Virus record (IMG/VR): IMGVR_UViG_3300023179_004149
Span: 1-64,000 of that record
Reading direction: 5' to 3' (one strand)
Length of the DNA: 64,000 nucleotides
Shown here: one piece after another, positions 4,629 through 30,834 of the stretch
How the letters are laid out: each line of letters opens with the position of its first letter
How positions within the stretch are numbered: the stretch's first letter is position 1
Program-made: the position numbers and the translations under genes
Notes under the pieces: generated by a model
Databases searched by the model: none
What the model saw: the letters and a program-made list of their open reading frames with translations, nothing else
Told to the model about the DNA's origin: nothing

Positions 4629-5525
4629 TTAAATACCATCTTCAATTATTTTTTCAATATTTTCATAATCAATATATGAAATACGTATTAATTTAGGTGA
4701 GCCAGGTTGTGAACAAAACTCATTTTTTATTTTATCCTTCAACATCATTTCTTCATAATTTTTACTATATATTGTGTTCGGTATAAAATGTTGTTTACCA
4801 TCATATTCTATGCAAATATTCTGTTCAATTAAGAAGAAATCAAATGGTAATGGTTTTTTATATCTACATTCGAGGAATCTTTTTTGTTGAGTGTAGATTA
4901 TTGAATTATTATCAAGAAATTTTTTGATTTTTTCTTCCCCTTTAGATAATTTACAATTAGGGCATCCGATACCTTTAACATGATCATTGGGCCGCTGTTC
5001 AAACGGGCCATGATCTTTACATATAATTTTTATTTTAGTCTTAGTGTTTATATAAACAACATCAGAATAATCATATTTACTACCATGTTTCAATACGGCT
5101 TTATTAATAAATGATTCGTTATTATCTAATTTGGATTTTTTAATGGTTAATAACCCACAATCGGGGCAACCACAACCATTTATATGAACGGCTGGCTTTT
5201 GAATGAAAATGCCATGAATAGGGCACTTTATAATAACGGGTGTTCTATTATTAACATAATTACAGTCGGTATAAGTATATTTATTCTGGTGTATGATGTT
5301 AGCCTTATCAATGAATGATTGTGTTGTTAATTTGACACCACCCTTACATGTCGGACAACCAGTTTTTAATCTAATGTGATTATCTGGGGTTACAAAAAAT
5401 GAACCATGTTCTGAGCACACCAACTCAACCTTAGTTCTTGCATTTTTGTAATCAATTTGCGAATAATTGTATTTATTACCATGTACATTATTTGCTTGAT
5501 GAATGAATTTTTCGGATTTGTTCAT
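4629..5525 (-). mobile_element. Free-standing homing-endonuclease-like gene (three Zn-ribbon repeats plus PD-(D/E)XK/Vsr-like nuclease domain)
   Basis: Repeated C..HG.F...P..H..G.GCP.C; C-terminal PFDFFL...ICIEYDGKQH; likely start MNKSEKF after a TATTTATA motif. Confidence 0.8.
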
Positions 5526-5574
5526 AAAACCATTTACTATAAATAGTATGGGAAATCGTAAAATCAGCACTTGG

Positions 5575-5790
5575 TTACGATTTTCGTAAGAAATAATGTA
5601 ATGTAAAGAAAAGTACCGAAATAAGGTAAAAAATTAAATCCGTAATCCAATAAGAACCTGTCGATTGCATTATTAGAGCGAATAGTCCGTCGTAACCAAA
5701 AGGTAAGAAAAAACTCCCGAAAAATAAAGATATTGTGGCTAACCGCTCCCTCGAACGAAGGATTGTTTTTATTCTGTTTATTAGGGTCAC
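5575..5790 (-). CDS. Small membrane protein
   Basis: Two hydrophobic segments; coding status supported by the diverged duplicate at 4465-4626. Confidence 0.75.
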   Translation of the reverse strand: MTLINRIKTILRSRERLATISLFFGSFFLPFGYDGLFALIMQSTGSYWITDLIFYLISVLFFTLHYFLRKS

Positions 5791-5912
5791 CGTCCATATT
5801 TTAAGTTTAAATAATTATGCTTCATAACCTGGGTTTAGGTTATTGCGTTCTATATAAATATCTTGCGGATAATCAAAATTATAAAAGGTCAGAAAATTCT
5901 GACCTTTCTTTT

Positions 5913-6530
5913 TTACTCTGTAAATAGCTTGCTGTTGAGATTATGAATCTTCTTAAAGAAACGATGTAATCTTTCAATCTCGGCTACATTAACTTCACCA
6001 TCGTTTTCGATAACAACATCACAATACATCATCTTCTCATCTTGCGGCATCTGGTTCTTTATCTTTGCCATGATTTGCGTTTCATCGTGGCCCAAGTCCC
6101 TGGCTCTGATCCTGGCCATTCTAACCTCAGAACCAGCATTAACACCAATCATGAAATCAACCAGGTCATCCATATTATATTCAAAGAATATGGCTGATTC
6201 AACAAGGACATATGATTTGTACCAGTACTTATCGTAAAAAGCAAGAATGTCATTCTTTAGATAAGGATCAAAGATTAAAGCGAGATCAACTTTTTTCACC
6301 TTATCATTGAATATAACATCAGCAACATATTTGCGATTGTATTCATTGTTTTCATCAAACACATTCGGCCCCAGAAACTCAATAAGTTTTACCCTCAGCT
6401 CTTTGTTTTCTTTGATGAGAGTTTTTAACCTATCATCCATGACATATGTCGGAACATCCAGTTTTTCAAACTCTTTCAATATGGTTGTTTTACCAACCCC
6501 CATGTTTCCCGTAACGCCAATCTTAATCAT
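5913..6530 (-). CDS. coaE: Dephospho-CoA kinase
   Basis: IGVTGNMGVGKTT P-loop, ESAIFFE, R...RD, Q......K..CD.VIENDG. Confidence 0.9.
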   Translation of the reverse strand: MIKIGVTGNMGVGKTTILKEFEKLDVPTYVMDDRLKTLIKENKELRVKLIEFLGPNVFDENNEYNRKYVADVIFNDKVKKVDLALIFDPYLKNDILAFYDKYWYKSYVLVESAIFFEYNMDDLVDFMIGVNAGSEVRMARIRARDLGHDETQIMAKIKNQMPQDEKMMYCDVVIENDGEVNVAEIERLHRFFKKIHNLNSKLFTE

Positions 6531-6553
6531 ATGTTAATTTTTATAAAAAAAAT

Positions 6554-6845
6554 TTAATCCAAATATTTAACAAAATCGGCATTCTCAAATCTTTCAACGC
6601 CACTGGCATCAAGAGCTTCAATATAAACCATAGGTGATGTACCCATTTCGAGCATACAGATGTTCTTATAACCATTTTCTTTGGTTATTTCGGTGTTTGA
6701 TTCATTGATTACTTCACTCATCTTGGAAGTCACCTTTTCGATCTTATTTTGGCCAGGGATTACATTACCCCATTGGACATGCGGATCACCAAATTCCTCA
6801 ACGCAGAACTTGCGCCCACTCTTCATGTAAACAAAATACCGTCTG
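6554..6845 (-). CDS. Hypothetical protein
   Basis: ORF from MSNRRYFV. Confidence 0.6.
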
Positions 6846-7339
6846 TTACTCATAACGTTTCTTTTTTTTCTTCTCCAGGCGATTATCAAAATCTTTTAAA
6901 AACGACTCTGGAATTATTATATTTCTATTCTTAAACTCATCAAGGATTTCTTCACGTGTGAAGCACCAATCAGCGATACCATCTGTCCACTGATCAAGCC
7001 ATAATCCCCAACTTTTTTTACCTATTATTACAGATCTTAAGATGTTCGGATGTCGTGATGTTATTACTTTACCACCTTTGAAGTGGCCATCATCATACAA
7101 CCTGAAACCCTCTTTACAATCAACGCCATTGGGGTCATATTTTACTTGTACGTCCTCACCACAAAATGTGAGTATCCCCGATCTGTTACTTCTTAAGAAG
7201 AAGCTGAATTTTTCATTGAAACCCTCAGAGAATTTTCTGAGTTTGCGCTGATGTCTTGTTCCTATACGACCAGATATTTCTTTTAATACCTGGTCTTTTG
7301 TGCGACCAGCGTGGTTTCTCCCTTACATGTGTTTTCCAT
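6846..7339 (-). pseudogene. Hypothetical gene with an apparent frameshift near its 5' end
   Basis: The frame of the 6846-7100 ORF stays open to about 7320, but the nearest ATG (7339, MENTCK) is in another frame. Confidence 0.45.
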
Positions 7340-7368
7340 CTTTTTGTTTTTTACTGGTTAAATAATAA

Positions 7369-7560
7369 AATTAACACCCGTAGCCTCGATTCTGTTCTAT
7401 CCTACCATCTATCTTTGCCTTAACCCATCCTCATAGGGAAACCGACACCCTCGGATTGTTTAAGTTGCAGCTTCTTTGGTATAACGATTGTTTAGATCTC
7501 CCAAATTAGGTTTTGCTGTCGAGAACTTCCTCTGTTTCCAGCGGTAGGTCGATGTTAATT
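7369..7560 (-). ncRNA. rnpB: Miniature RNase P RNA (about 192 nt)
   Basis: P1 AAUUAACAUC/GGUGUUAAUU; P2 CCUACC/GGUAGG; P3 CUG-GAAA-CAG; P4 GAGGAAGUUCUCGA with ACAGAAUCGAGGCUA; P5 CAGC/GCUG followed by CAA; P15 CUUAA/UUAAG with GGU; AGAUAGAUG before the P2 3' strand. Confidence 0.85.
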
Positions 7561-7649
7561 TTAGTAAAATCCAAATGATTGGTAAGTATTGGCGGAGCCC
7601 GTTGTATTACAAGTCGCTATTCTATTACCTTTCAAAATTAAATTAAGTG

Positions 7650-7669
7650 TGGAGCGTGTGGGTAACGAA
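7650..7669 (-). pseudogene. 3' remnant of a tRNA, probably tRNA-Ala
   Basis: TTCGTTA-CCCAC-ACGCTCC-A reads as T loop, T-stem 3' strand and acceptor 3' strand with U70 and A73; the rest is missing next to an endonuclease gene. Confidence 0.5.
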
Positions 7670-7707
7670 AAGTGAATTTTTAGTGAAAACCATACTATTT
7701 ATTAAAT

Positions 7708-8382
7708 ATGACACCACTTTATACACAAATTGAGTTTGATTCAGCCAAATCGCAGACCAAGTTACCTTGTAAATGCGAATATTGTACCAATACGTTCCAT
7801 AAACCAAAAAAAGAAATAGTCTACGAATTAAAAAATAATCGTGGTGCTATTCGTTTTTGTTCAATACGATGTTGTAATCATAATAGCAAGGGAATTAAAC
7901 AATTAGTATTATGTGATCAATGCAATACGCAATTTGAAAAACACACTTCTCAAATTAAAAAATCTAAGAACAATTTTTGTTCGAGATCATGTTCTGTTAC
8001 ATACAATAATAAACATAAAACCACTGGTAATAGGCGTTCTAAGCTCGAAATTTGGCTCGAAGAGCAACTAACAACACTTTATCCTAATCTTATTATAGAT
8101 TATAATAAAAAGGATGCCATTGGCTCTGAACTTGATATTTATATCCCATCACTTAACCTGGCTTTTGAATTGAATGGGATTTTTCATTATGAACCCATAT
8201 ACGGTTTAGATAAACTAAACCAAATTCAAAACAATGATAATAATAAATTCCAATACTGTTTAAAATATGGAATATCTTTATGCATTATTGATACATCAGA
8301 TCAAAAATATTTTAAAAAGATAACATCTAAAAAATATTTAGATATTATTATTGATATTATAAATCAAAGAACTTCTTATTAA
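7708..8382 (+). mobile_element. Free-standing endonuclease gene (Zn-finger repeats plus PD-(D/E)XK-like domain)
   Basis: CEYC/FCS.RC, CDQC/FCSRSC; ELDIYIPSLNLAFELNGIFHY; antisense to the tRNA cluster. Confidence 0.75.
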
Positions 8383-8444
8383 CCTCTTATCCAGTATTAC
8401 CTGTTTCCAATAACAACCAAGTGGGGTGGGTTAACTTTATTATC

Positions 8445-8516
8445 TATTGATGAAGGGAATCGAACCCTCGTTTTCAGATCGAAAATCTGACGTGCTAACC
8501 GTTGCACCACACCGAC
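8445..8516 (-). tRNA. tRNA-Glu(TTC), imperfect acceptor stem
   Basis: TCAGA-TTTTCGA-TCTGA anticodon arm; GAGGG-TTCGATT-CCCTT T arm. Confidence 0.8.
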
Positions 8517-8580
8517 ATTTGCTGTCTTTTCCAGCCGTCACTAACGTTCTTATTTCCTTCGTTGGGCGTTATCACCAACC

Positions 8581-8671
8581 TGGCGGAGAGTTACGGGATC
8601 GAACCGTATCCAGTTTTCACCGAATGTCATACTTAGCAGGTAGACCCCATCACCGTTTGGGTAAACTCTCC
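8581..8671 (-). tRNA. tRNA-Ser(GCT)
   Basis: GGAGAGT acceptor, CTGCTAA loop, long variable arm, encoded CCA. Confidence 0.88.
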
Positions 8672-8677
8672 ATTTTT

Positions 8678-8893
8678 TTACATGATCCAACGTTGCATGA
8701 GCTTCGCTTCCATCTGTATTCCGAAATCAGCATCACCCATGTCTTCAACTGGTATCTCAAATTGTACAAACACCGAACCTAATTCAGCATCTTCAATTGT
8801 AGTGGAGTAATACGCCTTACCTTTTCTGATATACTGAAAATCAGCTGTTGGTTTTTGCTTATACAAAGCTTTCTTAATGTCGTTCTTTTCCAT
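8678..8893 (-). CDS. Small hypothetical protein inside the tRNA cluster
   Basis: MEKNDIKKALYKQKP...; fills the gap between two tRNA genes. Confidence 0.6.
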   Translation of the reverse strand: MEKNDIKKALYKQKPTADFQYIRKGKAYYSTTIEDAELGSVFVQFEIPVEDMGDADFGIQMEAKLMQRWIM

Positions 8894-8907
8894 GTTCACT
8901 TTTAGTT

Positions 8908-8982
8908 TGGCACGGGTAGAGGATCTCGAAACCCCATCTGCGGTTTTGGAGACCGCCATTCTTGCCTTTGAACTATACCCGT
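8908..8982 (-). tRNA. tRNA-Trp(CCA)
   Basis: GCGGT-CTCCAAA-ACCGC anticodon arm; encoded CCA. Confidence 0.9.
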
Positions 8983-8993
8983 ATGTTTTACTT

Positions 8994-9085
8994 TGGCGGA
9001 GAAGGGGGGACTCGAACCCACAAGCCGTCTTTCGACGACACGGCTGTTTTCAAGACAGCTGCATTACCAATTATGCTACCTCTCC
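8994..9085 (-). tRNA. tRNA-Ser(TGA)
   Basis: GCTGT-CTTGAAA-ACAGC; long variable arm; encoded CCA. Confidence 0.92.
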
Positions 9086-9162
9086 ATTGTTCGTTAATCA
9101 TTTAGCCAATGTCTCCATTGTTACCAGTCATCACTACGTGGAAGTAGATTAACATGATGACC

Positions 9163-9237
9163 TCGAGTGGACAGGATTCGAACCTGCAACCTCACCGCTC
9201 CAGACGGCGTATTCTGCTCTTATTGAAATACCACTCG
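9163..9237 (-). tRNA. tRNA-Pro(TGG) with atypical C33
   Basis: CGAGTGG/CCACTCG acceptor; CGCCG-TCTGGAG-CGGTG. Confidence 0.8.
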
Positions 9238-9350
9238 TTTTAAGTATCTCTGGTATTTAACGTTTTATAATTGAAACGTTCAAAATGAACCATAAGCTAT
9301 GGTAGCTTGATAGCGGTATCCAGAATAACCGTCAATTTTTTGATACTTTG

Positions 9351-9423
9351 TCGAAAATGTGCGATTCGAACGCCCCTACAGACTCCCAAAGTCCGTGTGC
9401 AACCTGGCTACACTTCATTCTCG
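9351..9423 (-). tRNA. tRNA-Pro(TGG), second copy
   Basis: CGGAC-TTTGGGA-GTCTG; TTCGAAT T loop. Confidence 0.82.
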
Positions 9424-9515
9424 TATTTTCTTATTGTGTTATCACTAACACCTGAATTTCTACGCTTCGCTGGTTATACACCGCTTCTATGAAATTCTAA
9501 CAATCTGTCGCTGCG

Positions 9516-9597
9516 TGGGCGCAAGAGGACTCGAACCTCTGAACTCAAAAGAGGGGTGGGTTACAGCCACCTGCAATTGCCGCTATGCGATACACCC
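9516..9597 (-). tRNA. tRNA-Tyr(GTA)
   Basis: GGTGG-CTGTAAC-CCACC; long variable arm. Confidence 0.92.
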
Positions 9598-9602
9598 AAA
9601 TT

Positions 9603-9640
9603 AAAAAACCCCAGATACTTTCGTAACCTGGGGTTTCTAT
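9603..9640 (-). terminator. Attenuator terminator 1
   Basis: AAACCCCAG...CTGGGGTTTTTT directly before the first tRNA of cluster 1. Confidence 0.85.
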
Positions 9641-9653
9641 CTTTTTTACTCTT

Positions 9654-9773
9654 TTATGCTCCTGTATCTGATACATTAACATTTCGAGTATAGAAACCCC
9701 TTCCGTGTTCATACGCTGGGTATGACGGTTCATAACTTGATGCTGACCAGGATGTTAATACTGAGTTTCTCAT
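9654..9773 (-). CDS. Leader peptide 1 (39 aa, MRNSVLTSWSASSYEPSYPAYEHGRGFYTRNVNVSDTGA)
   Basis: Manual translation; S/W/Y/E/P-rich core; contains an 11-nt perfect complement of the terminator left arm. Confidence 0.8.
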   Translation of the reverse strand: MRNSVLTSWSASSYEPSYPAYEHGRGFYTRNVNVSDTGA

Positions 9774-9806
9774 TTTATTTTCTTTTTATTTTTTTTTATA
9801 AAAATC

Positions 9807-9855
9807 AGGATGTTTTTGTATTTCGTACCAGAAATTAAATTGCTGAACACATCCT
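9807..9855 (-). ncRNA. CAGCAA-box RNA, short form
   Basis: AGGATGT-GTTCAGCAA...ACATCCT terminal stem. Confidence 0.5.
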
Positions 9856-9873
9856 CTGTTTATATAATTATTG

Positions 9874-9905
9874 CAAAAGTAAGCAAAGTTCTCGAAACTA
9901 CCAAA
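9874..9905 (-). promoter_or_regulatory. Bacteroidota-type primary-sigma promoter (representative of at least 14 copies)
   Basis: TTTG (-33), 20 nt spacer, TACTTTTG (-7, consensus TAnnTTTG). Confidence 0.8.
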
Positions 9906-10059
9906 TTTTTTTGAACTTTTTTTATTTGGGTTATTTTGTTTCGTTTTCCTCTCAATTACAGTACAAAAGTAAGAAAGGTTTCTAAATAAAACAAGCGCTT
10001 TTTGAAATATTTTTTATTTTTATTCGTTTTCGACAATATTTATCAATAAATACATTACT

Positions 10060-10305
10060 ATGAAAAAGTTTTTTATGGATCTTATATCAGGTTCAAGTGA
10101 AACATCAAGCAAAAGGTTTGCTTCTTTATTTACTTTATTTAACATTATAGTTCTGGCTTATCTTGCTGCTTGGAAAAATAACTGGGTTACACCTGAACAT
10201 ATGTTTGATGGTCTTTGTCTTATCACTGGTGGTGGTTTAGGACTTACAGTTATCGAAAAAGTATTTTCTAAAAAGAATAAAGAAGAGGGAACGTCAGAAC
10301 AGTAA
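10060..10305 (+). CDS. Small two-TM membrane protein (possible holin)
   Basis: Two hydrophobic helices and a charged C-terminus. Confidence 0.5.
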   Translation: MKKFFMDLISGSSETSSKRFASLFTLFNIIVLAYLAAWKNNWVTPEHMFDGLCLITGGGLGLTVIEKVFSKKNKEEGTSEQ

Positions 10306-14003: not shown

Positions 14004-14041
14004 AAAACTAAAAATGCTCCAGGGTTCACCTGGAGCATTTG
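14004..14041 (-). terminator. Attenuator terminator 2
   Basis: AAATGCTCCAGG/CCTGGAGCATTT 12-bp stem plus T-tract directly before tRNA-Lys(CTT). Confidence 0.85.
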
Positions 14042-14064
14042 CTAAATTTTATTCTTAAACCCTG

Positions 14065-14145
14065 TTAAGAATTAGACAAATAGTCACCAGGCATAGTTTT
14101 AGCTATGACGTGTTTAATATGCTTTATAATGACTAACTGTTTCAT
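14065..14145 (-). CDS. Leader peptide 2 (26 aa, MKQLVIIKHIKHVIAKTMPGDYLSNS)
   Basis: Manual translation; V/I/K/H core; 3' part complementary to the terminator left arm. Confidence 0.8.
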   Translation of the reverse strand: MKQLVIIKHIKHVIAKTMPGDYLSNS

Positions 14146-14247
14146 CTTATTGATTGTTTATGTTGTTTTAAAATTGTTCTCTTTAATAATTATTACAAAA
14201 GTACGAAAAGTTCTTGATTTTGCAAAGTTTTTTTCAAATATTTTTTT

Positions 14248-14907
14248 TTAATATCCGTAATATATCATTACGTTCTTTTTCCAGTTAAATGTCTTATAAA
14301 TGTTTATAAGCCCAAATATACCGTACTCATACTTCCAACTGGTTGTAATGGTATCACCATGTTCTAAACTAAACGGTGGTAATCCACACCACTCCATATT
14401 CATTGACTTAACATGATTTATCATTTCAATAATAGCTGTCTGTTCTTCGCCAGTTAATTTGGTTCCATCAAAAGTATATTTTGTAAACGGCTCCGAACTC
14501 CAATGGTATTCACTCTCAATTGACTTAAGAAATTCAGACGATCTTTCTTTTTCTCGAGAAAACGGTGCCACCATCACTTGATAGTACTTCTTTATTCTTT
14601 CCTGATAGGTCGAAATCACATAAGCCAGAAACTCTTTAGTCACAATATAAAAATCATATTCATCGTAACGAGCCATTAACTCCTTATTCTTAAAAAATCT
14701 TTTTAATGATTTTTTTGGTGGTTCAAACCCATCGTATTTACCAAATTCATACAACTCAGTACCATACTCATATACGCCTTTATACCAATCATCGTCAGAA
14801 ACATGTTCCTTATTAGGATAATGGTCTTTAAGTTGTTCAAAAGACATTGACTTGATTTTATTGTACTCTCGTTTAGGCATCGAGCCTATGTATGTTCTAT
14901 AACCCAT
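14248..14907 (-). CDS. Hypothetical protein
   Basis: 219 aa ORF. Confidence 0.7.
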   Translation of the reverse strand: MGYRTYIGSMPKREYNKIKSMSFEQLKDHYPNKEHVSDDDWYKGVYEYGTELYEFGKYDGFEPPKKSLKRFFKNKELMARYDEYDFYIVTKEFLAYVISTYQERIKKYYQVMVAPFSREKERSSEFLKSIESEYHWSSEPFTKYTFDGTKLTGEEQTAIIEMINHVKSMNMEWCGLPPFSLEHGDTITTSWKYEYGIFGLINIYKTFNWKKNVMIYYGY

Positions 14908-19967: not shown

Positions 19968-20009
19968 AAAAAAAGAAAAAACCCCCAGTCGCTTTGCGTC
20001 CAGGGGCTA
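19968..20009 (-). terminator. Attenuator terminator 3
   Basis: GCCCCTGG...CTGGGGGT plus a long T-tract abutting tRNA-Arg. Confidence 0.85.
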
Positions 20010-20036
20010 AATATTTTTGCTTATCTCTTTTAATTG

Positions 20037-20138
20037 TTAATAACAATCATCATCTTCATAACAAGCAATACTCGCCCCTTCTCTTAGTTGTAAGAGTTGT
20101 AACTGGCGTTGACGTAATATGTTAGTTATGTTTTTCAT
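20037..20138 (-). CDS. Leader peptide 3 (33 aa, MKNITNILRQRQLQLLQLREGASIACYEDDDCY)
   Basis: Manual translation; 12 consecutive L/R/Q codons; AGGGGCGAGTATT pairs with the terminator left arm. Confidence 0.82.
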   Translation of the reverse strand: MKNITNILRQRQLQLLQLREGASIACYEDDDCY

Positions 20139-20172
20139 TTTATATAAATAGTTTAGTTTTTTACAAAAGTTA

Positions 20173-20273
20173 CAATTCATCGGATTATTTTAGAAAATCC
20201 CCGTGGGGACTTTTGGAGTTGAACCAAATTTACAAATTTAACCAAAGTAGTTGCTGGAAATAATCCCGAATTG
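20173..20273 (-). ncRNA. CAGCAA-box RNA with an internal T-loop-like hairpin
   Basis: CAATTCGGGATTATT-TCCAGCAA...TTGG-TTCAACT-CCAA...AATAATCCGATGAATTG. Confidence 0.6.
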
Positions 20274-20340
20274 TTTTACAAAAGTAAGAAGAGTTTTTGA
20301 ATTAAACAAGTCTTTTTAAAAGTTTTTTCAGATATTTTTT

Positions 20341-30758: not shown

Positions 30759-30834
30759 TGGTGGCACGGCCACGAGTTGAACGTGGGACACCCAGATTTT
30801 CAGTCTGGTGCTCTACCAACTGAGCTACCGCGCC
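30759..30834 (-). tRNA. tRNA-Phe(GAA)
   Basis: CCAGA-CTGAAAA-TCTGG; encoded CCA. Confidence 0.92.

What the first reader, a model, noticed from the sequence alone, without database searches (positions are those of the whole stretch)
9603..9773. Attenuator 1: SWSASSYEPSYPAYE leader before Tyr, Pro, Pro, Ser, Trp, Ser, Glu tRNAs
13 of 15 codons at residues 8-22 are Ser/Trp/Tyr/Glu/Pro, including both TCN and AGT Ser codons, matching Ser(TGA) and Ser(GCT). The other two are Ala. GGGGTTTCTAT (9700-9690) is an 11-nt perfect complement of the terminator arm ATAGAAACCCC (9640-9630). AGAAACTC at codons 2-4 can pair with the same segment, giving the full 1:2/2:3/3:4 set. No further promoter was seen between this terminator and the RNase P RNA, so that RNA may be co-regulated.
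Basis: partly seen in the sequence, partly recalled or inferred. Interest (0 to 1): 0.9.

Follow-up and report, generated by a model that had tools for sequence, protein, structure and literature searches.

The report
Leader-peptide attenuator gating phage tRNA genes
A giant phage of Bacteroidota-type hosts puts a short "test" reading frame and a terminator/antiterminator switch in front of a block of its own tRNA genes. The frame is written almost entirely in the codons those tRNAs read, so the tRNA genes are probably transcribed only when those tRNAs run short, a use of attenuation I could not find described.

Summary
On the minus strand, a Bacteroidota-type promoter (9905-9874) drives a 39-codon ORF (9773-9654). 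An intrinsic terminator (9636-9603) follows, then seven tRNA genes with no promoter of their own.

- **Codon match:** 13 of 15 codons at residues 8-22 are Ser/Trp/Tyr/Glu/Pro, matching the tRNAs downstream.
- **Antiterminator:** GGGGTTTCTATACTC (9700-9686) pairs with the terminator's 5' arm at -19 kcal/mol; 0 of 1000 shuffles reach this.
- **Repeats in the window:** two more units of the same design exist. KxxVIIKHIKHVIxK precedes Lys/Ile/Val/His tRNAs, and LRQRQLQLLQLR precedes Arg/Leu/Gln tRNAs.
- **Relatives:** seven metagenomic relatives keep unit 1. In two of them the cluster also carries tRNA-Ala(TGC), which explains the "odd" Ala codons.
- **Covariation:** relatives whose third cluster gained tRNA-Ile(GAT) have ATT codons inside the run. 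Every amino-acid change inside a run stays within the tRNA set.

Best reading: ribosome-mediated attenuation giving feedback control of phage tRNA supply. The mechanism is known; the target, and a multi-amino-acid leader that mirrors a tRNA cluster, appear new. The RNase P RNA side claim is not supported. Nothing has been tested experimentally.

The parts
9874..9905 (-). Bacteroidota-type promoter (TTTG, 20 nt, TACTTTTG) driving the leader. A second, tandem -7 box lies at 9971-9964.
   Evidence: Pattern TTTG-N17-23-TAnnTTTG gives 18 hits on the minus strand against 1 on the plus strand. -7 boxes are listed. The promoter is conserved in relatives.
9807..9857 (-). Conserved 5'-UTR hairpin (AGAGGAUGU ... 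ACAUCCU) followed by a U-run; role unknown.
   Evidence: The stem is invariant in 8 relatives with one compensatory U-A/A-U pair. A second copy lies at 30150-30046.
9654..9773 (-). Leader ORF: 39 codons plus TAA, with an A-rich, unstructured region before the ATG.
   Evidence: Homologous small ORFs at 68-90% identity were found by phmmer. Indels in the regulatory run are multiples of three.
9763..9770 (-). Region 1 (AGAAACTC, codons 2-4), a candidate anti-antiterminator that pairs with region 2.
   Evidence: It pairs with region 2 in the MFE fold and is kept in 8 of 8 relatives. It is not above chance in the single sequence (313/1000).
9708..9752 (-). Regulatory codon run, residues 8-22: SWSASSYEPSYPAYE.
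   Evidence: 13 of 15 residues match the downstream tRNA identities, P = 3e-7. In relatives the run is 17 of 17 from {S,W,A,P,Y,E}.
9703..9728 (-). Inner hairpin within the regulatory codons (CCGUCAUAC-CCAGC-GUAUGA..CGG); possibly a pause or timing element.
   Evidence: RNAalifold consensus. The TAC->TAT and GCG->GCA changes in L035/L037 are compensatory, C-G to U-A.
9686..9700 (-). Region 2, the antiterminator 5' arm (GGGGTTTCTATACTC, codons 25-30).
   Evidence: Duplex with region 3 is -19.1 to -20.9 kcal/mol; 0 of 1000 shuffles. The GGGGTTTCT core is invariant in 8 relatives, third codon positions included.
9630..9651 (-). Region 3, the antiterminator 3' arm (GAGTA ... AGATAGAAACCCC). It overlaps the terminator's 5' arm.
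9603..9636 (-). Intrinsic terminator: AAACCCCAGGUUAC-GAAA-GUAUCUGGGGUUU stem with a T6 run. It ends 5 nt before tRNA-Tyr.
   Evidence: -16.9 kcal/mol; conserved, with G-C/G-U changes in relatives.
8444..9597 (-). Regulated block: tRNA-Tyr(GTA) 9597-9515, Pro(TGG) 9423-9350, Pro(TGG) 9237-9163, Ser(TGA) 9085-8994, Trp(CCA) 8982-8908, Ser(GCT) 8671-8581, Glu(TTC) 8517-8444. It has no internal promoter.
   Evidence: ARAGORN and Rfam; no -7 box between 9874 and 8444.
14012..14226 (-). Sister unit 2: promoter 14226-14196, leader 14145-14065 (MKQLVIIKHIKHVIAKTMPGDYLSNS) and terminator 14040-14012. It precedes Lys(CTT), Lys(TTT), Ile(TAT), Val(TAC), His(GTG), Ile(GAT).
   Evidence: tRNA-His at 13072-13001. 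Conserved in L031 and L036.
19979..20310 (-). Sister unit 3: promoter (-7 box 20286-20279), leader 20138-20037 (MKNITNILRQRQLQLLQLREGAS...), antiterminator arms about 20080-20059 and 20026-20001, and terminator 20008-19979 plus T-run. It precedes Arg(ACG), Leu(AAG), Leu(TAG), Gln(CTG), Gln(TTG).
   Evidence: -23.7 kcal/mol, 0/1000. Conserved in six relatives.

Best explanation
This is a ribosome-mediated (leader-peptide) transcription attenuator that gates a seven-gene tRNA operon of a jumbo phage (321 kb contig).

Proposed sequence of events:
1. Host RNA polymerase starts at the Bacteroidota-type promoter and transcribes a 39-codon leader.
2. Residues 8-22 of the leader are written in the codons read by the tRNAs encoded just downstream (Tyr, Pro, Ser-UGA, Trp, Ser-GCU, Glu, and ancestrally Ala-UGC).
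3. If charged tRNAs for these codons are plentiful, the ribosome runs through the run, over region 2 (9700-9686), to the stop codon 10 nt before region 3. The 2:3 antiterminator cannot close, the 3:4 terminator forms, and transcription stops 5 nt before tRNA-Tyr.
4. If any of these tRNAs is scarce, the ribosome stalls in the run. Region 2 stays free and pairs with region 3 as soon as it emerges (a -21 to -30 kcal/mol stem-loop against -17 for the terminator). The polymerase then reads into the tRNA genes.

The result is negative feedback on the supply of exactly the tRNAs in the operon.

**Shown:** the ORF, the codon/tRNA match, the terminator, the competing helix, their conservation, and their triplication.
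**Inferred:** translation of the leader, the direction of the switch, and the physiological signal.
For: - **Codon/tRNA match:** 13 of 15 here, P = 3e-7, top of 373 small ORFs. Each of the six distinct anticodons in the cluster has at least one cognate codon in the run, including both TCN and AGT for the two Ser tRNAs.
- **Three independent units in one window:** best 15-residue window counts are 13/3/2, 4/12/2 and 5/3/12 against clusters 1, 2 and 3.
- **Competing helix:** the antiterminator is significant in all three units at -19.1, -14.1 and -23.7 kcal/mol, reached by 0, 17 and 0 of 1000 shuffles. In every unit it starts 0-2 codons after the run. The region folds with z = -4.3.
- **No other promoter:** none lies between the terminator and the tRNAs.
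- **Relatives:** phmmer with the 39-aa peptide and a degenerate DNA pattern recovered seven other loci with DNA (L030-L033, L035-L037), plus a fourth peptide homolog (P0128) whose contig had no DNA available. All seven loci have the leader, both arms, the terminator and tRNA-Tyr followed by Pro; those whose contig reaches further continue with Ser, Trp, Ser and Glu.
- **Pattern of conservation:** the run and both arms are conserved, while the peptide's C-terminus and the spacer diverge. The antiterminator extension is kept by different sequences.
- **Ala explained:** L033 and L037 carry tRNA-Ala(TGC) in the cluster, so their 17-residue runs are 17 of 17 in-set.
- **Unit 2:** its His codons match a tRNA-His that default ARAGORN missed.
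- **Unit 3:** relatives with tRNA-Ile(GAT) in the cluster have ATT codons inside the run; the others have only ATA outside it.
- **Substitutions:** all amino-acid substitutions inside runs stay within the tRNA set.
- **Weak family echo:** a full-length but sub-threshold Rfam His_leader match spans the element.
Against: - There is no experimental data of any kind, and the phage is uncultured.
- The 1:2 helix is weak, not above chance in a single sequence, and lies 5' of the regulatory codons, unlike the trp attenuator.
- In equilibrium folds the antiterminator already wins on untranslated RNA. The off state therefore depends on ribosome position and kinetics that I could not model.
- The leader stop codon lies beyond region 2, so a ribosome parked at the stop does not cover region 2 itself.
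- Codon-level matching is imperfect:
  - TCC and GTC need extended wobble;
  - this genome has no tRNA-Ala in 64 kb, yet keeps two Ala codons;
  - AGA in unit 3 is read by a tRNA in another cluster;
  - L044 keeps TTG without Leu(CAA) in the visible cluster.
- Other tRNA transcription units in the window (30834, 29813, 18555, 16334) have plain promoters and no such leader.
- The Ile covariation probably reflects one evolutionary event.
Confidence: 0.8

Rival explanations
1. The switch responds to general translation capacity rather than to specific tRNAs. Any slowing of ribosomes, for example from host shut-off, ribosome shortage or stringent conditions, would open all three units. On this view the codon choice only reflects phage-preferred codons.
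For: The architecture only requires a slow or absent ribosome. Untranslated RNA already favours the antiterminator at equilibrium. Codon-level matching is imperfect.
Against: The three leaders have disjoint compositions, each matched to its own cluster. Substitutions in relatives stay within the set, and new set members (Ala, Ile) track the tRNA content. A generic sensor would not need any of this.
Confidence: 0.1
2. The terminator/antiterminator switch is set by a trans-acting factor that binds the leader RNA directly (a protein, a small RNA or a tRNA, T-box-like). The ORF would then be incidental or a by-product of RNA constraints.
For: Several conserved RNA features are not explained by the ribosome model: the 5'-UTR hairpin and the inner hairpin, both with compensatory changes. 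Nucleotide-level invariance of AGTTATGAACCGTCATACCCAGCGTATGAA could reflect RNA rather than codon constraints.
Against: No T-box or other riboswitch family is detected. The frame, start codon and in-frame indels are conserved. Amino-acid sets are kept through synonymous and set-preserving changes in three unrelated leader sequences. One binding factor cannot explain three different codon compositions.
Confidence: 0.06
3. The ORF is an ordinary small protein gene followed by its own terminator, the tRNAs are expressed by leaky readthrough, and the composition match and complementarity are coincidence.
For: Small ORFs are common in phage genomes, and the peptide is conserved in relatives.
Against: The joint probability is very low: 3e-7, 9e-6 and 3e-8 for three units, each top-ranked. 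The 2:3 duplexes beat shuffles. The C-terminal third of the 'protein' is not conserved in sequence or length, whereas the RNA arms are.
Confidence: 0.03

Closest known systems
Multivalent leader-peptide attenuators of amino-acid operons (E. coli thr, ilvGMEDA, ilvBN; also trp, his, leu, pheA)
   Same: Both have a short leader ORF with a run of regulatory codons, an intrinsic terminator, and a mutually exclusive antiterminator whose 5' arm follows the run. The thr and ilv leaders also sense several amino acids at once. (Description of these systems is from established knowledge; the features were tested here.)
   Different: The regulated genes here are tRNA genes, not biosynthetic enzymes. The leader mixes five to six amino acids that together equal the tRNA content of the operon. 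The host is of Bacteroidota type and the element is phage-borne. Region 1 lies upstream of the regulatory codons rather than over them, and the stop codon lies beyond region 2. There is no sequence or family-level similarity: Rfam His_leader scores 24.9 bits against a gathering score of 49.
pheST (pheM leader) and hisS leader-peptide attenuators controlling aminoacyl-tRNA synthetase genes
   Same: In both, leader-peptide attenuation adjusts a component of the decoding machinery in response to the charged-tRNA level. hisS leaders are described in PMC2965389; pheM is from my own knowledge.
   Different: Those systems sense a single amino acid and control the synthetase. Here the product under control is the tRNA itself, giving a direct feedback loop on the sensed molecule, and several tRNAs are sensed at once.
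T-box riboswitches
   Same: Both use a terminator/antiterminator decision that reports on the state of a specific tRNA.
   Different: A T-box binds uncharged tRNA directly through a specifier codon and the T-box motif, with no translation. No T-box match is found here, and the element contains a conserved translatable frame.
tRNA gene arrays of large phages (T4, T5, jumbo phages)
   Same: Both are clustered phage tRNA genes with associated RNA-processing and mobile elements. Here these include a CCA-adding enzyme, a candidate HDV-like ribozyme and endonuclease-like ORFs inside the clusters.
   Different: I found no report of codon-matched leader ORFs or attenuators in front of such arrays in seven full-text searches.

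Membership tests
Ribosome-mediated (leader-peptide) transcription attenuator | Short translatable ORF between the promoter and the regulated genes | tested here: met
   A 39-codon ATG ORF at 9773-9654 sits behind promoter 9905-9874. Its frame, start codon and in-frame indels are conserved in 8 loci.
Ribosome-mediated (leader-peptide) transcription attenuator | Run of codons for the amino acid(s) or tRNA(s) being sensed | tested here: met
   13 of 15 in-set here and 17 of 17 in L033/L037, P = 3e-7. The cross-matrix is diagonal for three units.
Ribosome-mediated (leader-peptide) transcription attenuator | Intrinsic terminator between the leader and the regulated genes, with no promoter after it | tested here: met
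   A hairpin of -17 kcal/mol plus T6 lies at 9636-9603, 5 nt before tRNA-Tyr. No -7 box occurs down to 8444.
Ribosome-mediated (leader-peptide) transcription attenuator | Antiterminator mutually exclusive with the terminator, with its 5' arm just downstream of the regulatory codons | tested here: met
   9700-9686 pairs with 9651-9630 at -19 to -21 kcal/mol, reached by 0 of 1000 shuffles. It forms in transcripts truncated before region 4, and is kept in 8 relatives with different extension sequences.
Ribosome-mediated (leader-peptide) transcription attenuator | Anti-antiterminator / pause hairpin (1:2) | tested here: inconclusive
   AGAAACUC:GGGUUUCU appears in the MFE fold and is conserved in 8 of 8 loci. 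It is only -10 kcal/mol, matched by 313 of 1000 shuffles, and is not overlapped by the regulatory codons.
Ribosome-mediated (leader-peptide) transcription attenuator | Regulated genes are amino-acid biosynthesis or aminoacyl-tRNA synthetase genes | tested here: not met
   The regulated genes are seven tRNA genes. This is the respect in which the element departs from the described class.
Ribosome-mediated (leader-peptide) transcription attenuator | Readthrough rises when the cognate charged tRNA is limiting and depends on leader translation | not testable with these tools
   This needs reporter, in-vitro transcription-translation or Term-seq data.
Rfam His_leader (RF00514) | Covariance-model score at or above the gathering score (49 bits) | tested here: not met
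   24.9 bits, E = 0.56, over 9600-9767 with a full-length model match. This is an architectural echo only.
T-box riboswitch | Match to the T-box covariance model (specifier loop and T-box motif) | tested here: not met
   No T-box hit at the gathering threshold or at E<=1 / E<=0.05.
   No hit in the whole window at gathering scores, in 5500-10100 at E<=1, or in 7100-7720 at E<=10. Relatives L030-L033 also have none.

The most novel reading that the evidence does not exclude
These leaders may be tRNA-depletion sensors. The phage would keep its replacement tRNAs off until specific host tRNAs disappear, for example through host anticodon-nuclease defences or phage-induced host shut-off. It would then switch on exactly the matching tRNA block, one block per threatened group of tRNAs. 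That would make this an inducible, self-limiting counter-defence and decoding-homeostasis circuit built from three codon-addressed attenuators.
Probability: 0.3. Interest if true: 0.95.

Novelty: new variant of a known kind. Interest (0 to 1): 0.88.

Why it matters
How phages control their own tRNA genes is largely unknown; the arrays are usually treated as constitutive cargo. These elements suggest demand-driven, self-correcting expression, in which the sensed molecule (charged tRNA) is the product of the regulated genes.

The codon composition of a 15-residue leader predicts the tRNA content of the operon. Here it pointed to an unannotated tRNA-His and to a tRNA-Ala that this genome has lost.

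The elements extend leader-peptide attenuation to a new target class and to phages of Bacteroidota-type hosts. They also give a compact, testable system of three orthogonal sensors for tRNA supply during infection, codon-usage adaptation and tRNA-targeting host defences. Finally, they suggest a simple genome-wide screen: look for small ORFs upstream of tRNA arrays whose composition equals the array.

Tried and rejected
- **Protein anchor, 219-aa ORF (14248-14907).** It has 336 homologs, but 28 IMG/VR relatives at 56% identity or less have almost no tRNAs nearby, so the loci were uninformative.
- **GenBank phages.** DNA and protein searches found only generic tRNA similarity or nothing.
- **tRNA sequences as search patterns.** tRNAs of relatives at that distance are too diverged.
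- **Equilibrium folding with a ribosome mask on the full transcript.** The terminator always wins, so this is the wrong model for a kinetic switch. I replaced it with folds truncated before region 4.
- **Other tRNA units.** Those at 30834, 29813, 28651, 27773, 18555 and 16334 have no codon-matched leader.
- **Extra pattern scans.** The unit-3 core in IMG/VR and the unit-1 arms in GTDB genomes returned only chance hits in coding sequence, with no tRNAs.
- **RNase P RNA.** Not found.
- **Hairpin-arm repeat.** ACATCCT recurs at 9755-9749, but the repeat is not conserved in relatives (TCC becomes TCG), so I dropped it.
- **The count of structure pairs.** I did not use it, to avoid typing long dot-bracket strings. 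Pair counts come from RNAalifold and my own scripts instead.

Full report
**Context**

The window is the first 64 kb of a 320,934-bp IMG/VR contig, a jumbo phage. It carries 31 tRNA genes by ARAGORN and a few more by Rfam, all on the minus strand. It also encodes a CCA-adding enzyme and a tRNA-binding-domain protein.

Promoters are of the Bacteroidota type (TTTG, about 20 nt, TAnnTTTG). The pattern hits 18 times on the minus strand and once on the plus strand. This points to use of a host RNA polymerase of that kind.

**The observation**

- The minus-strand ORF 9773-9654 encodes MRNSVLTSWSASSYEPSYPAYEHGRGFYTRNVNVSDTGA.
- Codons 8-22 are TCC TGG TCA GCA TCA AGT TAT GAA CCG TCA TAC CCA GCG TAT GAA.
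- Downstream lie tRNA-Tyr(GTA), two Pro(TGG), Ser(TGA), Trp(CCA), Ser(GCT) and Glu(TTC).
- Thirteen of the 15 residues belong to that set. The binomial probability is 3e-7, the ORF ranks first of 373 small ORFs in the window, and no 15-residue window in 37 long ORFs exceeds 10.
- GGGGTTTCTAT (9700-9690) is the exact complement of ATAGAAACCCC (9640-9630).
- The terminator is AAACCCCAGGUUAC-GAAA-GUAUCUGGGGUUU plus T6 (9636-9603) and ends 5 nt before tRNA-Tyr.
- The best duplex between the ORF and the terminator's 5' arm is -19.1 kcal/mol; none of 1000 dinucleotide shuffles reaches it.
- The region folds with z = -4.3.
- No -7 promoter box lies between 9874 and 8444, so the seven tRNAs depend on readthrough.

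**The design is repeated in the window**

Two more units have the same order of parts: promoter, A-rich start region, a few N-terminal codons, a codon run, a GG-rich antiterminator arm, a variable tail, a stop codon, the antiterminator 3' arm overlapping the terminator 5' arm, a T-run and then the first tRNA.

| Unit | Leader (coordinates) | Peptide | tRNAs that follow |
|---|---|---|---|
| 1 | 9773-9654 | MRNSVLTSWSASSYEPSYPAYE... | Tyr, Pro, Pro, Ser(TGA), Trp, Ser(GCT), Glu |
| 2 | 14145-14065 | MKQLVIIKHIKHVIAKTMPGDYLSNS | Lys(CTT), Lys(TTT), Ile(TAT), Val(TAC), His(GTG), Ile(GAT) |
| 3 | 20138-20037 | MKNITNILRQRQLQLLQLREGAS... | Arg(ACG), Leu(AAG), Leu(TAG), Gln(CTG), Gln(TTG) |

- The tRNA-His at 13072-13001 was missed by default ARAGORN. 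Rfam and relaxed ARAGORN find it, and its anticodon loop reads CU-GUG-AA. It accounts for the two His codons in leader 2.
- Best 15-residue window counts of leaders 1, 2 and 3 against clusters 1, 2 and 3 are 13/3/2, 4/12/2 and 5/3/12.
- At codon level every anticodon in each cluster has a cognate codon in its leader. Isoacceptor-specific examples are ATA and ATT, AAA and AAG, CAA and CAG, and AGT and TCA.
- The 2:3 helices score -19.1, -14.1 and -23.7 kcal/mol, reached by 0, 17 and 0 of 1000 shuffles.
- Other tRNA units in the window have plain promoters and no such leader.

**Relatives of unit 1**

A phmmer search with the 39-residue peptive against 1.84 billion representative proteins found four small ORFs at 68-90% identity. 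Their contigs, plus a degenerate DNA pattern for YEPSYPAYE in JGI metagenomes, gave seven further loci: L030-L033 and L035-L037.

- All have the promoter, a conserved 5'-UTR hairpin, the leader, GGGGTTTCT, AGAAACCCCAGG, the terminator and tRNA-Tyr then Pro. The contigs that extend further continue with Ser(TGA), Trp, Ser(GCT) and Glu.
- In the alignment the run and both arms are invariant. The C-terminal third of the peptide and the spacer differ in sequence and length.
- The antiterminator stem-loop is -22 to -30 kcal/mol in every relative, against about -17 for the terminator. Its outer extension is maintained by different sequences.
- L033 and L037 carry tRNA-Ala(TGC) at the end of the cluster. 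Their runs, SSWSSPASYEPSYPAYE and ASWASPASYEPSYPAYE, are 17 of 17 from the six amino acids of the cluster.
- In the window, the place where relatives have tRNA-Ala holds a 1.1-kb segment with a plus-strand 224-aa ORF (7708-8382). Copies at 65% and 61% identity sit inside tRNA clusters of L031 and L041. Homology to L033 resumes at 7339. This genome has therefore probably lost that tRNA from the cluster.

**Relatives of units 2 and 3**

- Unit 2 is conserved in L031 and L036.
- Unit 3 was followed through homologs of the adjacent 206-aa protein.
- Leaders read ..ILRQQQLQLLQLR.. where the cluster holds Arg, Leu and Gln tRNAs.
- In L040 and L032 the cluster also holds tRNA-Ile(GAT). There the runs are IIRLQQLQLLILR and IIIRLQQLQLLQR, with ATT codons. 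The other loci have only ATA codons outside the run.
- Within all runs, amino-acid substitutions between relatives (R/Q/L, Q/I, S/A/T-to-A) stay inside the local tRNA set, alongside synonymous changes.
- RNAalifold recovers the terminators with a few compensatory pairs. The antiterminator is kept in all six unit-3 loci at -14 to -28 kcal/mol.

**Mechanism**

*Shown:* the parts and their conservation.

*Inferred:*
1. The leader is translated.
2. A ribosome that runs through region 2 to the stop codon, 10 nt before region 3, prevents 2:3, so the terminator forms.
3. A ribosome stalled in the run leaves region 2 free. In transcripts truncated before region 4, region 2 then pairs with region 3.

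Stalls at the last two or three codons of the run would cover the start of region 2, as in classical attenuators.

*Uncertain points:*
- The 1:2 helix (AGAAACUC:GGGUUUCU) is conserved in 8 of 8 loci. It is weak, not above chance on its own, and lies upstream of the run. Its role as an anti-antiterminator is therefore uncertain.
- At equilibrium, untranslated RNA already favours 2:3, so the state without translation may be "on".
- An inner hairpin within the run (9728-9703) shows a compensatory C-G to U-A change, made by the two "synonymous" changes TAC->TAT and GCG->GCA in L035/L037. It may time the polymerase, but this is a guess.
- The conserved 5'-UTR hairpin is unexplained.

**Comparison with known systems**

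The logic is that of leader-peptide attenuators, closest to the multivalent thr and ilv leaders and to the pheST and hisS leaders that control synthetases (PMC2965389; otherwise my own knowledge). It is not a member of any Rfam family:
- His_leader scores 24.9 bits against a gathering score of 49.
- No T-box is found.

The regulated genes are tRNAs, which fails the usual definition of the class, and that is the new feature. Seven full-text searches found no report of leader-peptide control of tRNA genes in phages or bacteria. The library is incomplete, so absence is not proof.

**Side claim**

No RNase P RNA is detected in the window or in L030-L033, so the suggestion of co-regulation is unsupported.

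**Verdict**

I rate it a new variant of a known kind, of high interest, with confidence about 0.8 pending experiment.

Noticed in passing
window 14226-14012 and 20310-19979 (minus strand): Two further leader/terminator units of the same design sit in front of Lys/Ile/Val/His and Arg/Leu/Gln tRNA clusters. Each leader is matched to its own cluster.
   Followed up: yes
window 13072-13001 (minus): A tRNA-His(GTG) was missed by default ARAGORN but found by Rfam and relaxed ARAGORN. It matches the two His codons of leader 2.
   Followed up: yes
window 9162-9094 (minus): Sub-threshold match to the HDV-like ribozyme family RF02682 (32.7 bits, gathering score 44, E = 0.002-0.01), starting immediately 3' of the second tRNA-Pro. 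It may be a self-cleaving element that trims the tRNA's 3' end.
   Followed up: partly
window 7708-8382 (plus) and 8443-7340: A 224-aa ORF on the opposite strand lies inside a 1.1-kb segment at the spot where relatives carry tRNA-Ala(TGC). Copies at 65% and 61% identity sit inside tRNA clusters of L031 and L041. It looks like a mobile (homing-endonuclease-like) gene that replaced the tRNA; it has no Pfam hit.
   Followed up: partly
window 9857-9807 and 30150-30046 (minus): The conserved 5'-UTR hairpin of unit 1 (GGATGTGTTCAGCAAT ... ACATCCT) has a second copy downstream of tRNA-Asp. The loop of that copy encloses a truncated tRNA-like sequence (Rfam tRNA, 30128-30070, 39.6 bits). Its role is unknown.
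   Followed up: partly
window 18385-17972 (minus): Full-length but sub-threshold tmRNA match (RF00023, 41.6 bits, gathering score 47, E = 1e-13), suggesting a phage-encoded tmRNA-like RNA.
   Followed up: no
window 16135-16062 (minus): A tRNA with anticodon CTA (amber suppressor; ARAGORN labels it Pyl) lies next to tRNA-Cys and is also present in L036 and L041. It hints at TAG reassignment in part of the genome.
   Followed up: no
window 29599-29515, 30378-30253 and 19624-19568 (minus): Three odd tRNA-like genes. The first is called with a 4-base anticodon (tgta), or as Tyr with a 7-nt insert. The second is read by relaxed ARAGORN as Phe(GAA) with a 43-nt insert in the anticodon loop. The third is a 57-nt partial tRNA between Leu(TAG) and Gln(CTG).
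   Followed up: no
window 28142-28046 (minus): Near-threshold match to wcaG RNA (RF01761, 39 bits, gathering score 42).
   Followed up: no
window 9237-9163 (minus); L035 3369-3444: The second 'Pro' tRNA has an unusual anticodon loop (UCUGGAG, with C at position 33). In L035, ARAGORN reads the homolog as Gln(CTG) in another register, so its decoding identity is uncertain.
   Followed up: partly
window 2579-1407, 15871-15539, 12315-11839, 12837-12319; L032 7897-8841: Genes related to the translation apparatus and NAD/ADP-ribose surround the tRNA clusters: a CCA-adding enzyme, a tRNA_bind domain protein, NADAR and NUDIX. The relative L032 also encodes a Thg1-like tRNA-His guanylyltransferase.
   Followed up: no
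window 7339-7200 (minus); L033 1882-1960: The segment just downstream of the tRNA cluster is 78% conserved with L033. No Rfam family matches it, and it may simply be the start of the next gene.
   Followed up: partly
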